From: Ascidiella aspersa
Lineage: Eukaryota
Reading direction: 5' to 3'
Length of the DNA: 64,000 nucleotides
Assembly: GCA_963924565.1 (NCBI GenBank)
Contig: OZ004614.1
Coordinates: 17,422,001 to 17,486,000, forward strand
Shown here piece by piece: positions 51,357 to 64,000 of the stretch (positions within the stretch are counted from its first letter, which is position 1; each line of letters begins with the position of its first letter). The translations under genes were made by a program, and so were the position numbers. The notes beneath the pieces are model-generated. The model did not search any database and had not been told where the DNA came from. It saw only the letters and a program-made list of their open reading frames with translations.

Positions 51357-60767
<9,411 letters not shown>

Positions 60768-61336
60768 AACCCTAAATTTGCTTTCGCAAGATTTAAAATG
60801 AAAATATTAAATTAATAAAGAATGAACTTAAGTGTAAACTGTATAGTTTTGCTTTCAATACTTTGTATATAGTCATCATGTTGTTTCTGCCCTTTTTTTT
60901 TTAAATAAATACTGTTGTAAAATGTAGTGTTTTTAAGCAGGCAGATTCTGGTTAAAACTCATATACATGACCAAAACATAATGTGAATAAACATGAAAAA
61001 CATTTACTGTAGGAACAAAGTTGCACATTTTAGCATGAAACAAACACACAGTAATCAAATCAACAGTTTGGAGTACTTTTTACAAGTGTAAGGTTTAAGT
61101 AGTACAATGCGTTACAAAAGTTTGAACAGGCAGGAATGTGTTTTACATAAAAATAAATAGACTTGAACGATTTTTTAATATTGATTCCAAATTAATAAAT
61201 AAAACAGAATGTCTGCACTTACAATAGTACCTCTGTCACAAACCCCACAATAACTGCATTTTTAAGCAAATAAAATAATTTTTCTGTTTAAAATGATCAG
61301 CATTATTAGAGCACAACAACAGTTTAATTTCTCTTC

Positions 61337-63324
61337 CTATGTCGAAGGCATGCAAAGACTTGGGTGGACTGAGGAATTTGCATTAAACATAAGTTTAATC
61401 ATTGAAACAACACAGGATGGCAAAGGGACATGCATGTCTTCAGTCAAATATCCCCAACACCAACGCACAAATTGACAGTATGCAATATACCGGTAGCGTC
61501 TGAAAGCAAAAATATTAAAATAGCCAATAAAACTCAGAAAAATTTAGCTACAAATGTTATATCGTAGACATGTAGAACTACTTACTCATAATCTTTTGTC
61601 ACAGATAACTCTCCCATTTCCTGGCGATGCTGATAGTAAGCAACCTGTAGAACCCAGTGGTTAAGACACACAGCTCTAAAACCTGGATGATCAGTGATGC
61701 ATTTTAATGGCGGGTTGATTTCTTTAATTCTGTGCTGAATCGCTTTGACATCTGAACAGCAAACGCACTTCTGTGGATCTTGCATTGCTTGGCACTTCGT
61801 GCAGCTGCACCTAAATTTTATATTCAAAGCATTTTGTTAGAACTGACAAAAACAAGGTCAGGGAAAATCTTTTATAGTTGTATTAACTAATCCAGAGGTA
61901 GGCACGTCTATGGTCTGTGAGACCTGTTTAAAAACTGGACACAACAGCATACACCATGCTTTTGTCTATTTTAACTATGTCTTGTGTGAATTTCTCAGCC
62001 CAAAAATGTCTATTTGAGTATAGGTAGACTTTAATTTTTTTACATAATCCTTCATCTGTCCCTGATTTAGAAAAATAAACCTACACATATTGACAATTAA
62101 TTGTTAGTGGAAATTTACTAGAAGGTAACCACTTTTTTAGCTATGAAAGAGAGTCAAATTTGAAATTACATAGTTAAATATGGAAGAATAAATACTTGAC
62201 CCACCCAAATGTTACTAACTAAACACCTTAACCCAAAGAATGTTAGCAATAAAAAACCCTGGACAATAATGTGGCAGGATTCTAAACCACCACTGAAATT
62301 TGTTATGGCCCACCAAGACCTTAGGCTAAGGAAAGGTTGCCAACCCTGATCTATTGCATGCCTAAAATAGGTGAGATAATAAAGCGTCCTTAAAATATAA
62401 AGATCGCTACAAGTTAAAAAAACAAATTATCAAAATGGTAACCATGTAAGGTTTTCTGAGTGATGTTCCAAGGCTGGAACAACAGGTGATTTTGGAGAGA
62501 TTGGATTCTTGCGAGGTCTTCCTCGGCCTCTCTTGGGGGTAGTAACTGGTGATACATGTTTCTTTTCTTTTTTAACTGGTACAGTTTCAGTTATTTTGTT
62601 TTCAGAAGTCACTGTTTCAATGCCCTCCTCATTTTCTCTCCTGAGAGTGTCCTCCAGCCATGGTTGCATAGCAGCTAAATGTCTGCTGCTGTTGTTATGT
62701 CTCTGCAGACGGTCATGGGCTTTGCCCCACTTTGAAAAACCAGTTGATGCATAAATTGTCAGTTTTTTAGGATCTTCAGTTCCGAAGTGGCGACAGGCAA
62801 AGCAAAAGGCTTTGTCCAATGAAATTGAATATTCAAGCCAAGGAAAGCGGTCATACCAATTGGCGCAAAAAGACCGTGCTGTACGACAGGTGCCAAACAC
62901 AGTTTTGGGGTAAACAGTCATTCGAGGTTGAACTGGGCCATCATCAATTGTTCTTGAAATGTCATCTGGGCATTTTCCGTCACTTTCTTCAATCTACAAA
63001 ATAATAGATATTAGTGTTTACTATTGCAGAATATTTTCAATCTGAATTATAAATTCATCTCAATTAAACGATACCCTTTCACATTGAGATTACCACTGAG
63101 ACTTTTTGGCTATTGTATTCAGATGGTTTACAATCTTTGTCAAAAAATGTAACAAATAAAAACCACAATTACTTGTAAATAAATCTCACATGTGATTCAT
63201 CTTGGCTTTCATTTTGCTCTAAAATGTTGTTTATATCTGAAGTATTTGCATCGTTCTCAGTTAAAATCTCCAACTGTTCTGTTCCGTTTTGAGTTTCATC
63301 AATTTCAGAACAATCCACCTCCAT
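61337..63324 (-). CDS. Chimeric protein: acidic N-terminus, ZnF_TTF zinc finger, AT-hook, P2X7-ballast/Nanor-like Cys-rich domain
   Basis: Minus-strand exons 63324-63190, 62993-62443, 61810-61586 and 61499-61337 splice in frame (about 357 aa). ZnF_TTF: RSFCANWYDRFPWLEYSISLDKAFCFACRHF..GFSKW....H..S..H. AT-hook: KRGRGRPRK. Ballast-like: WCSCTKCQAM....CVCC, CITDHPGFRAVCLN, RYIAYCQFVRWCWGYL......LPSCVV..I. Confidence 0.82.
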
Positions 63325-64000
63325 ATTACAAAATATAACACAGCACGGTAATATAAATAATCTAGATGCAAGCAAAACAAATATATATTTTCCCTTCATA
63401 TACCAACACATCTCGTGCTAAGCCATATTATTAGTAAAATTGTAATCAAATCGATGCAACTCTGCACTCTTCCACCAAATGTGAATTCGGCGATTTTTTT
63501 TTAATTTGGAAAACTTTAGATTAACGTTTACCATAATTGTGTTTATTTTTATTTTGCTTTTGCATAAATCAACGAAATAAACTGTTTATAAAACAAAAAA
63601 ATGCTGGAATGCATTTTTAAACAACATCTAACAAAAAATTAACTTATTTATAGAAGAATAATCTCTGTAATAAAATAATAATTTTGCGATTTAAAGTTTT
63701 AAACAAAGAAAAAAAAAAAAAAAAACTGTAACTGTAACTGTATAATTATATTGGCCGAAAATTTATTTTCGGGACACATCTTGTTTTTGCTCGAATTCTT
63801 TTATGTTTTTTTTGGTTTATTTCAGACCGTTTTACTTTTTTGTCCAGAGGTTCACAGGAAAACTATAATTTGGAGAGACTTCAAATGTCCATTCAAGATG
63901 GATGCGTATATGTAGATGATCCTTTAAGGCTTTAGAAGTCTATTTACCTAGGGGCCTTCAGCTGGGGGTAGAAATTGGAAACAAAATATGACGTCATCGT

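What the first reader, a model, noticed from the sequence alone, without database searches (positions are those of the whole stretch)
61337..63324. Intact chimeric gene fusing a hAT-type ZnF_TTF finger, an AT-hook and a channel-less P2X7-ballast domain
Seen: four in-frame GT-AG exons with all expected Cys/His/Trp positions, no stops, no transposase catalytic core, no transmembrane segment and no enclosing TIRs. Known: ZnF_TTF is the N-terminal finger of hAT transposases and ZMYM-like domesticated genes; GRP AT-hooks bind AT-rich minor grooves; the WCxCxxC..CC..CIT.H..F...C..R..AY..F..W.......LPSC domain is the Zn/GDP-binding P2X7 ballast. From memory, it also occurs in Nanor and in Kolobok-type transposon accessory proteins. 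Inference: a domesticated nuclear DNA-binding protein assembled from two transposon superfamilies. It might bind the many hAT MITE ends in this genome or couple nucleotide/Zn sensing to chromatin. I do not recognise this architecture.
Basis: partly seen in the sequence, partly recalled or inferred. Interest (0 to 1): 0.8.

Follow-up and report, generated by a model that had tools for sequence, protein, structure and literature searches.

The report
Transposon-finger plus ballast-domain host gene
This is a real, single-copy, spliced and expressed animal gene that joins a DNA-binding zinc finger of the kind hAT transposons carry to the zinc-rich "ballast" domain otherwise known from the P2X7 receptor tail and Kolobok transposons; the combination appears undescribed and hints that the ballast domain originally worked on DNA.

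Summary
Four GT-AG exons on the minus strand (63324-63190, 62993-62443, 61810-61586, 61499-61337) give 357 codons. RNA data confirm all three introns. Every exon is single copy in the 308.6 Mb genome; no transposase or terminal repeats flank the gene.

- **Exon 2** encodes a CCHH finger. Its long relatives are hAT transposases (DUF4371 + hAT dimeriser), so it is the hAT TTF type. A disordered basic linker follows, carrying a canonical KRGRGRPRK AT-hook.
- **Exons 3-4** carry all three cysteine clusters of the P2X7 ballast (ZCD) domain. Both match Pfam P2RX7_C colinearly but below cut-off, because the domain is split.
- **GDP contacts:** only one of the five GDP-contacting residues is identical.
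- **Relatives:** exon 2 (60% identity, saturated synonymous sites, pN 0.15 in the finger) and exon 3 (about 70%) occur in other assemblies with the same intron positions. The AT-hook is not conserved there.

None of the 150 nearest finger proteins has a ballast domain, and the literature searched reports only THAP or TolA plus ballast in a tick. I read it as a domesticated fusion of two transposon-derived modules, probably a nuclear DNA-binding protein. It is a new variant of a known kind.

I did not search or fold the joined protein, so the ballast fold is untested. The scan had not noted this elsewhere in the genome.

The parts
63190..63324 (-). Exon 1: start codon at 63324 in a strong context (A at -3, G at +4). 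It encodes 45 acidic, Asn/Gln-rich residues and has no Pfam match.
   Evidence: It is covered by RNA reads, and the X3 contig joins it to exon 2. The relative L008 also has an acidic first exon.
62443..62993 (-). Exon 2: hAT-type (TTF-like) CCHH zinc-finger domain at residues ~10-125 of the exon translation. A disordered K/R-rich linker follows, holding the KRGRGRPRK AT-hook motif. The last two bases (TG) begin the Trp codon of the WCxCxxC cluster.
   Evidence: Pfam zf-C17orf113 at E 2e-5 (24.8 bits, cut-off 29.5) and AT_hook at E 0.37. The full library search gave 3003 relatives at E<=1e-3. C64, C67, H99 and H105 are near-invariant. In the AlphaFold2 model, pLDDT is mostly above 90 for residues 11-120 and 50-65 from about residue 130.
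62503..62535 (-). AT-hook / basic patch (KRGRGRPRKNP) inside exon 2.
   Evidence: Read from the sequence. Pfam AT_hook scores 11.2 bits against a cut-off of 17.4. The region is predicted disordered. At the same place the relatives have TRPMKRRKQS (L008) and KRKRSRPTKK (P0004).
61586..61810 (-). Exon 3: first half of the ballast (ZCD, P2RX7_C) domain. It holds the (W)CSCTKC, CVCC and CITDH cysteine clusters.
   Evidence: Pfam P2RX7_C profile positions 82-127, E 0.53. P0152/P0153 match at 69-71% identity with the same acceptor and donor positions. The Atlas look-alike cluster of P0153 carries PF20478.
61337..61499 (-). Exon 4: second half of the ballast domain (R-Y-I-A-Y..F..W..G, then LPSC, IK, F), followed by a short tail and the TAG stop.
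   Evidence: Pfam P2RX7_C profile positions 145-184, E 9.5e-5, 22.8 bits against a cut-off of 23.5. Single copy in the genome. The motifs match the consensus given in PMC7016195.
60984..61336 (-). 3' UTR. The transcript contig ends near 60984. One allele has a 42-nt insertion at about 61165.
   Evidence: X3 record 17, read depth, and the joint at 1365/1366.
62119..62326 (.). Dispersed ~205-bp repeat inside intron 2. It is not part of the coding sequence and is the only piece of the locus that is repeated in the genome.

Best explanation
This is a bona fide single-copy host gene of an animal; earlier notes of this scan call the genome an ascidian, which I did not check. Its protein of about 357 residues has four parts:
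1. an acidic N-terminal segment;
2. a CCHH zinc-finger domain of the type that sits at the N-terminus of hAT (DUF4371-type) transposases;
3. a disordered basic linker, which in this species is a canonical AT-hook and probably also a nuclear localisation signal;
4. a C-terminal zinc-coordinating cysteine (ballast) domain of the KolX/Nanor/P2X7-tail family.

Shown here: the exon structure, splicing, expression, single-copy status, the absence of any transposase or TIRs, the homology of the finger to hAT fingers, the presence of all ballast cysteine clusters, and purifying selection on the finger. Exon 2 and exon 3 are also conserved in other assemblies with identical intron positions.

Inferred: the protein is nuclear. 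The finger, helped by the basic linker, tethers it to DNA. The ballast domain acts there as a zinc-stabilised interaction or regulatory module, keeping whatever role KolX plays for Kolobok transposons, rather than as a GDP sensor.

The gene most likely arose by domestication: either two transposon-derived exon sets fused, or one transposon accessory gene that already had both parts was captured.
For: - Exons and frames.
- RNA joints at all three introns, and strand.
- Single copy.
- No other P2RX7_C match in the genome.
- No TIRs. No long ORF in the 10 kb upstream. An MCM gene lies convergent downstream.
- Finger: 3003 relatives, and 9 of 10 long ones carry DUF4371, 7 of them also Dimer_Tnp_hAT. 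The CCHH columns are near-invariant. The fold is confidently predicted for residues 11-120 with a disordered tail.
- Ballast: exon 4 hits P2RX7_C at E 9.5e-5. Exon 3 hits the preceding part of the same profile at E 0.53 against 24,736 models, which is about 2e-5 for that one model. All three cysteine clusters defined in PMC7016195 are present. The Atlas look-alike of the exon-3 orthologue is a PF20478 cluster at score 0.95.
- Conservation: the exon 2 of L008 has the same acceptor and ends ..TSW|gt in the same phase. Finger-core pN is 0.148 against pS 0.84, which is saturated. P0004 also ends ..PSW. P0153 has the same acceptor (agG TGC) and donor (GA|GTAA) as exon 3.
- Within-species differences: 3 synonymous changes in the folded domains, 2 replacements in disordered parts.
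- KolX/Nanor link: PMC9587614.
Against: - No localisation, DNA-binding or nucleotide-binding data exist.
- The ballast assignment rests on two sub-threshold Pfam hits plus motifs.
- phmmer of the exon pieces against PDB chains found no P2X7, and the exon-3 orthologue alone does not hit P2RX7_C.
- The ballast fold was not modelled, because the joined protein was not to be used.
- In the relatives, exon 2 and exon 3 lie on different contigs, so I could not show that they belong to one gene there.
- The finger model has no significant match to any solved structure (Foldseek E >= 1.6, VIA Z <= 4.0), so DNA binding is argued only from its place in transposases.
- The AT-hook is not conserved.
- An in-frame upstream ATG could add a hydrophobic N-terminus.
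Confidence: 0.6

Rival explanations
1. The two parts were never fused in the host. A hAT (or other) transposon lineage already carried an accessory gene with a TTF-type finger and a KolX-like ballast domain, and this gene is a single domesticated copy of that accessory gene.
For: Ballast-like accessory proteins occur in more than one transposon superfamily: Kolobok Kol0 and a few piggyBac families (PMC9587614). A tick protein joins THAP, another transposase-type finger, to the same domain (PMC7016195). That shows finger-plus-ballast combinations arise repeatedly, possibly inside transposons.
Against: None of the 150 nearest finger proteins contains a ballast domain. Transposase-linked relatives of the finger have DUF4371 directly after it. 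The nearest sister clade (P0003, P0006, P0010) has the finger without a ballast. No such transposon is present in this genome.
Confidence: 0.2
2. It is a transcribed but functionless relic: an immobilised transposon fragment or a young chimeric transcript that has simply not yet decayed.
For: The whole architecture is seen in one genome only. No function is known for KolX or for stand-alone ballast proteins. The AT-hook and the C-terminal tail motif (FP..Y(S/T)G) are not kept.
Against: All four exons are intact and the introns are precisely spliced. Exon 2 and exon 3 homologues are 60-70% identical with identical intron positions, although synonymous sites are saturated (pS 0.84 against pN 0.15 in the finger). 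All zinc ligands are kept. Within-species changes in the folded domains are all synonymous.
Confidence: 0.07
3. Translation starts at the in-frame upstream ATG (63399 or 63411). This would give a hydrophobic N-terminal signal or anchor, so the protein is membrane-tethered or secreted rather than nuclear.
For: The ORF is open from 63411. The extra residues include a 19-residue window of KD 2.52. The X3 transcript contig reaches at least 63408.
Against: The 63324 ATG has the stronger context (A at -3, G at +4) against T at -3 for 63399. RNA depth falls from 8 to 0.6 just upstream of exon 1's coding part. A 22-nt indel allele puts the 63411 ATG out of frame. The relative L008 has no such extension. 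Cysteine- and zinc-rich finger and ballast domains are cytoplasmic or nuclear modules in every known context.
Confidence: 0.08

Closest known systems
Stand-alone ballast (ZCD) proteins: zebrafish Nanor and Nanor-like proteins, Panther PTHR36981 (Rump et al. 2020, PMC7016195)
   Same: The three cysteine clusters lie at the C-terminus of a soluble protein with no P2X channel part. Of the GDP contacts only R546 and R578 tend to be kept, as reported there for invertebrate members. The genes occur in low copy number.
   Different: Those proteins are described as short, with N-terminal parts 'without obvious homologs'. Here the N-terminal part is a well-folded hAT-type zinc-finger domain plus a basic linker. 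The spacer between CC and CIT is longer, and the terminal FP..Y(S/T)G motif is missing.
KolX, the second protein of Kol0-lineage Kolobok DNA transposons (Kojima and Bao 2022, PMC9587614)
   Same: It has the same ballast-type domain, and that paper proposes it as the source of the P2X7 tail and of Nanor. A transposon origin for this gene's C-terminal half is therefore plausible.
   Different: KolX is encoded inside a mobile element next to a DDD/E transposase. This gene is single copy, has introns conserved across species, has no transposase or TIRs nearby, and carries a finger typical of another superfamily (hAT).
Ixodes scapularis THAP + ZCD protein (XP_029850348, cited in PMC7016195)
   Same: [quoted passage not shown]
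   Different: The finger family differs: THAP (C2CH, of P-element and Kolobok transposases) against the TTF-like CCHH finger of hAT transposases. It comes from a different phylum, and nothing is known about its expression or conservation.
P2X7 receptor cytoplasmic ballast (McCarthy et al. 2019, as cited in PMC7016195)
   Same: The zinc-coordinating cysteine pattern and the R..AY..F..W..G...LPSC core are shared.
   Different: This gene has no P2X ectodomain, no transmembrane helices and no C-cys anchor. The P2X7 ballast is encoded by a single exon, whereas here it is split by two introns. Four of the five GDP-contacting residues differ: H547 is Y, R574 is V, K583 is A and R578 is K.
Domesticated hAT-derived genes that keep the N-terminal finger (ZMYM1/C17orf113-type; Pfam PF25431, DUF4371)
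   Same: The finger domain is homologous. It hits zf-C17orf113 at E 2e-5, and DUF4371-bearing proteins (mostly also with the hAT dimeriser) are its relatives.
   Different: Those genes keep the transposase body (DUF4371 and the hAT dimerisation domain). Here only the finger is kept and it is joined to an unrelated domain.

Membership tests
Ballast / ZCD domain (Pfam P2RX7_C PF20478) | Cysteine cluster 1: (P)xWCxCxxC | tested here: met
   The sequence reads ..LT-W-CSCTKC. The Trp codon is split TG|G by intron 2, whose joint is confirmed by RNA. P is replaced by L. Consensus taken from PMC7016195.
Ballast / ZCD domain (Pfam P2RX7_C PF20478) | Cysteine cluster 2: CC followed by CIT(T/x) | tested here: met
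   The sequence reads CVCC..(17 residues)..CITDH. The spacer is longer than in P2X7. The cluster is conserved in P0153.
Ballast / ZCD domain (Pfam P2RX7_C PF20478) | Cysteine cluster 3: (L/I/V)PSC(C/S)x3IRx2(F/Y)Px5Y(S/T)G | tested here: inconclusive
   LPSC, I-K (in place of IR) and F are present. The P and the Y(S/T)G tail are absent.
Ballast / ZCD domain (Pfam P2RX7_C PF20478) | Profile score at or above Pfam's gathering score (23.5 bits) | tested here: inconclusive
Exon 4 alone scores 22.8 bits (E 9.5e-5, profile positions 145-184). Exon 3 alone scores 10.6 bits (E 0.53, positions 82-127). The two hits are colinear.
Ballast / ZCD domain (Pfam P2RX7_C PF20478) | Ballast fold with a dinuclear zinc site | not tested
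   The domain is split over two exons, and the joined model was not to be folded or searched. phmmer of the pieces against PDB sequences found nothing.
Ballast / ZCD domain (Pfam P2RX7_C PF20478) | Guanine-nucleotide contacts of rat P2X7 (R546, H547, R574, R578, K583) | tested here: not met
   I counted from the AY and PSC anchors without gaps. The equivalents are R, Y, V, K and A (residue list from PMC7016195). This feature is also not kept in other invertebrate ZCD proteins, so it does not define the domain family.
hAT-type N-terminal (TTF-like) zinc finger | CxxC ... Hx5H ligands at the conserved columns, with the surrounding PWLEYS / CFxCRxF / GFxxW motifs | tested here: met
   C64, C67, H99, H105, E54, Y55, S56, R68, F70, G85 and W89 are at least 90% conserved among 110 sequences, and all are present here.
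hAT-type N-terminal (TTF-like) zinc finger | Homology to the finger that precedes the transposase body in hAT elements | tested here: met
   The search gave 522 relatives at E<=1e-10. Nine of ten long ones have DUF4371 directly after the finger, 7 of them also Dimer_Tnp_hAT.
Pfam zf-C17orf113 (PF25431) | Score at or above the gathering score (29.5 bits) | tested here: not met
   It scores 24.8 bits, E 2e-5. This is a related finger family, not membership. SMART ZnF_TTF itself is not in the libraries at hand.
hAT transposon / transposase | RNase-H-like transposase body (DUF4371) and the hAT dimerisation domain | tested here: not met
   Neither is found in any exon. The ORF ends after the ballast domain.
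hAT or Kolobok transposon | Terminal inverted repeats, a transposase ORF nearby, and multiple copies | tested here: not met
   Only AT-rich 15-21 nt imperfect inverted repeats were found. No ORF of 111 aa or more lies in the 10 kb upstream, and an MCM gene lies downstream. All exons are single copy.
AT-hook | An R-G-R-P core flanked by K/R in a disordered segment | tested here: inconclusive
   KRGRGRPRKNP is present and predicted disordered. Pfam AT_hook scores 11.2 bits against a cut-off of 17.4. The core is absent from L008 and degenerate (RSRP) in P0004.
P2X7 receptor | P2X channel domain with two transmembrane helices | tested here: not met
   There is no P2X_receptor match and no hydrophobic 19-mer above KD 1.16 in exons 1-4.

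The most novel reading that the evidence does not exclude
The gene is a lineage-specific chromatin or transposon-control factor in which a KolX-type ballast domain is tethered directly to DNA by a transposase finger. Together with the tick THAP-ballast protein, it acts as a 'Rosetta stone' showing that the ancestral, channel-independent job of the P2X7 ballast fold is carried out on DNA or chromatin, for example in transpososome assembly or its inhibition. That would make the long-unexplained ballast domain testable in a simple soluble protein.
Probability: 0.25. Interest if true: 0.7.

Novelty: new variant of a known kind. Interest (0 to 1): 0.5.

Why it matters
The function of the P2X7 ballast domain, and of its transposon (KolX) and stand-alone (Nanor-like) relatives, is unknown. 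The published survey describes stand-alone members as lacking any other recognisable domain, apart from two tick proteins. Here the domain is fused to a transposase-type DNA-binding finger in a gene that is conserved, expressed and single copy. That fusion is circumstantial evidence that the domain acts at DNA. It also offers a small soluble protein in which zinc, nucleotide and DNA binding could be tested without a membrane channel. Finally, it adds a clean case of a host gene built from parts typical of two DNA-transposon superfamilies.

Tried and rejected
- I left out the joined-protein step. There was no Pfam scan, homology search or structure prediction of the spliced protein, so the ballast fold was not modelled.
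I could not fetch the contigs of P0004 (371 kb) or P0152/P0153 (11-14 kb) to show that finger and ballast exons are linked in the relatives.
- The single metagenome scan returned two contigs that end 1.2 kb into intron 2, before any ballast exon.
Only the stored homologue P0153 could be queried.

**Searches that gave little**
- The word-index searches were insensitive: 1, 1 and 4 hits. Their blanks mean little.
- phmmer of exon 3 and exon 4 against PDB sequences found no P2X7.
- Pfam on P0152/P0153 gave no P2RX7_C hit.
- Structure searches with the finger model gave nothing significant: Foldseek E >= 1.6, and VIA-align Z <= 4.0 with only weak resemblance to U1/matrin-type CCHH fingers.
- Rfam found nothing in the locus.
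- The literature search for 'P2RX7_C' found only unrelated P2RX7 papers.
- The careful tree did not finish in time, so only the quick tree is reported.

**Readings rejected**
- Ordinary transposon ORF: rejected by single copy, no TIRs and no transposase.
- P2X7 paralogue: rejected because there is no channel part.
- Binding to hAT MITEs of this genome: untestable here and without support. The other TTF/C17orf113-like loci of the genome (L003-L005) are not close relatives.
Full report
**What is there**

On the minus strand of the window, four exons with GT..AG introns can be read directly from the sequence:
- E1: 63324-63190
- E2: 62993-62443
- E3: 61810-61586
- E4: 61499-61337

Their lengths (135, 551, 225, 163) add to 1074 nt. 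That is 357 codons plus a TAG stop, and no in-frame piece contains a stop. Intron 2 splits a Trp codon (TG|G). Intron 3 splits a Glu codon (GA|A).

**Is it expressed and spliced as read?**

Yes. I laid one RNA-seq run of the same species label (X4, raw reads) and three runs held as contigs (X1-X3) on a 5.9 kb locus (L006; window position = L006 position + 59800).
- Joint 61499|61586 is shown by 6 reads with 6 different starts, plus a spliced X3 contig.
- Joint 61810|62443 is shown by 5 reads plus the X3 contig.
- Joint 62993|63190 is shown by the X3 contig, which carries a SNP at the last base of exon 1.

X3 is of unrecorded kind. Its contigs skip exactly these introns, so I take it to be RNA-derived. 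X4 depth is 6-12 over exons and 1-1.6 in intron 2. Read orientation fits a minus-strand transcript. The transcript runs from about 60984 to at least 63408.

**Is it a transposon copy?**

No.
- In the 308.6 Mb assembly each coding exon matches only itself.
- A DNA search with the whole transcribed region found other copies only for a ~205-bp stretch inside intron 2. That stretch has at least 45 copies, one of them in the neighbouring MCM gene's intron.
- The Pfam P2RX7_C profile found nothing else in the genome. This is a lower bound, because the search works exon by exon.
- Inverted repeats around the gene are short, AT-rich and imperfect.
- The 10 kb upstream holds no ORF longer than 110 codons.

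**The finger**

Exon 2 (183 residues) hits Pfam zf-C17orf113 at E 2e-5, below the curated cut-off.

A full HMMER search of 1.84 billion representative proteins gave 3003 relatives at E<=1e-3 and 522 at E<=1e-10. I scanned ten long relatives. Nine have DUF4371 directly after the finger, and seven of those also have the hAT dimerisation domain. The finger is therefore of the type carried by hAT transposases.

In an alignment of 110 sequences, C64, C67, H99 and H105 and the flanking EYS, R68, F70, G85 and W89 are at least 90% conserved. All are present here.

AlphaFold2 with that alignment folds residues 11-120 confidently (pLDDT mostly above 90). It leaves the stretch from about residue 130 to 183 disordered.

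The model has no significant match among solved structures: Foldseek E >= 1.6 and VIA-align Z <= 4.0. The weak top rows are U1/matrin-type CCHH fingers. DNA binding is thus argued from the finger's place in transposases, not from structure.

**The AT-hook**

KRGRGRPRKNP lies in the disordered linker and looks canonical. Pfam's short model gives only 11.2 bits against a cut-off of 17.4.

At the same place the two relatives have TRPMKRRKQS and KRKRSRPTKK. What is conserved is a basic patch, which could serve as a nuclear localisation signal. The AT-hook itself is not conserved.

**The ballast domain**

- Exon 4 hits P2RX7_C at E 9.5e-5 (22.8 bits, cut-off 23.5), on profile positions 145-184.
- Exon 3 hits the same profile at positions 82-127 with E 0.53.

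The two hits are colinear. An E of 0.53 over 24,736 models corresponds to about 2e-5 for that one model. I therefore regard the assignment as statistically sound, although neither half passes the curated cut-off alone.

The three cysteine clusters that Rump et al. 2020 use to define the domain are present (PMC7016195):
- WCxCxxC is W-CSCTKC.
- CC..CIT is CVCC..CITDH, with a longer spacer than in P2X7.
- (L/I/V)PSC..IR..(F/Y)P is LPSC..IK..FN.

The terminal Y(S/T)G is missing.

I counted without gaps from the AY and PSC anchors. The five rat GDP contacts (R546, H547, R574, R578, K583) correspond to R, Y, V, K and A. This matches the paper's remark that only R546 and R578 tend to be kept outside vertebrates. 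It argues against a conserved GDP site.

Weaker results:
- phmmer of the exon pieces against PDB sequences found no P2X7.
- The exon-3 orthologue alone does not reach P2RX7_C in Pfam.
- The ESM Atlas look-alikes of that orthologue include a cluster carrying PF20478 at score 0.95. This is a lead only.

**Relatives**

*Exon 2.* The only relative below E 1e-30 is P0001, a 170-residue ORF call. Its DNA lies on two JGI metagenome contigs (L007, L008). It shows an acidic first exon, then an exon that starts at the equivalent acceptor and ends ..TSW|gtatgt. That is the same phase-2 split of a Trp codon as here.

Over the finger core, Nei-Gojobori counts give pN 0.148 and pS 0.84. Synonymous sites are saturated, so selection on the protein has been strongly purifying. 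The linker is poorly conserved, with pN 0.44.

P0004 is a second relative, from a 371 kb ENA contig. It shares the PWL(A/E)DTL(V/R)RE motif and also ends ..PSW.

*Exon 3.* P0152 and P0153 are 69-71% identical. They begin at the same acceptor (agG TGC) and end at the same donor (GA|GTAA).

I could not show that the finger and ballast exons are linked in those organisms.

*Tree.* A quick maximum-likelihood tree of the finger places the window sequence with P0001 (SH-aLRT 91) and P0004 (87). This group is sister to three short finger proteins without a ballast domain (P0003, P0006, P0010). It lies apart from the transposase-linked fingers. The careful search did not finish.

*Within species.* The runs differ from the reference at five coding sites. 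Three changes are synonymous and lie in the folded domains. Two are replacements in disordered parts, T151A of exon 2 and H45Q of exon 1.

**Is the architecture known?**

- None of the 150 nearest finger proteins contains anything like exon 3 or exon 4, or the cysteine motif.
- Rump et al. state that ballast-domain proteins outside vertebrates are short and have no other conserved domain. The exceptions are two tick proteins with TolA or THAP at the N-terminus.
- Kojima and Bao 2022 identify the domain as KolX of Kol0 Kolobok transposons. They regard Nanor and the P2X7 tail as domesticated KolX (PMC9587614).

I found no paper that describes a TTF-type finger joined to a ballast domain. The search from the ballast side could not be done with the tools and rules in force, so examples in other phyla are not excluded.

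**How it most likely works**

Shown: this is a conserved, expressed, single-copy gene for a soluble protein with an acidic head, a transposase-type zinc finger, a basic disordered linker and a ballast-type zinc domain.

Inferred: the protein is nuclear and is tethered to DNA by the finger and linker. The ballast domain acts there as a zinc-stabilised interaction or regulatory module, inherited from the transposon protein KolX.

GDP sensing is unlikely given the substitutions. Binding to hAT MITE ends is unsupported, because the genome has no close relative of this finger. Its other C17orf113-like loci are different elements.

**Open point**

In-frame ATGs at 63411 and 63399 could add a hydrophobic 25-29 residue N-terminus (KD 2.52). 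Four observations argue against it:
- The context at 63399 is weaker than at 63324.
- RNA depth drops sharply just upstream of the coding part of exon 1.
- A 22-nt indel allele frameshifts the 63411 ATG.
- The extension is absent from the relative L008.

The start codon still needs experimental mapping.

**Other remarks**

Earlier notes of this scan call the genome a tunicate or ascidian. I did not verify that.

**Verdict**

The gene is a new variant of a known kind: a domesticated transposon-derived gene and a member of the ballast-domain family with a new partner domain. Interest is moderate, mainly as a handle on the unknown ancestral function of the ballast fold.

Noticed in passing
window 63397-63411 (minus strand): Two in-frame ATGs lie upstream of the modelled start. 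They would add a hydrophobic, signal- or anchor-like 25-29 residues. A 22-nt insertion allele between 63407 and 63408 is seen in the DNA runs and puts the first ATG out of frame.
   Followed up: partly
window 62119-62326 and 59093-59296: A ~205-bp dispersed repeat sits in intron 2 of the gene. A 95% identical copy lies in an intron of the neighbouring MCM gene, and at least 45 further copies at 70-83% identity are spread over the genome. I saw no clear terminal inverted repeats in the two-copy alignment.
   Followed up: partly
window 63741-64000, continuing to about 64922 (L006 3941-5122): Just upstream of the gene lies a mosaic of very high-copy repeats. DNA word depth is 1,000-5,000 times that of the single-copy flank, and the repeats are also covered by RNA reads on both strands. 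No Rfam family matches.
   Followed up: no
window 53300-60900 (+ strand): A multi-exon MCM-family helicase gene lies convergent with the gene studied. Its last exons are seen in the RNA contig at 59977-60129 and 60640-60891.
   Followed up: no
window 61165 (3' UTR): A 42-nt insertion allele in the 3' UTR is seen in RNA reads and in contigs of two runs.
   Followed up: no
proteins P0003, P0006, P0010 (ENA contigs): These form a sister clade of short proteins with the same finger type. They have acidic or low-complexity tails and neither a transposase body nor a ballast domain. They may be another set of domesticated fingers.
   Followed up: no
proteins P0009, P0025, P0005: Other recruitments of the same finger: one with a C2H2 zinc-finger array (P0009), one with an OTU protease in front of a hAT transposase (P0025), and a 2783-residue protein with 12 matched stretches (P0005).
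   Followed up: no
L003, L004, L005 (own genome, contigs C8, C5, C3): Three other C17orf113-type finger loci occur in this genome. Two sit beside hAT-like ORF fragments. None is closely related to the gene studied.
   Followed up: partly
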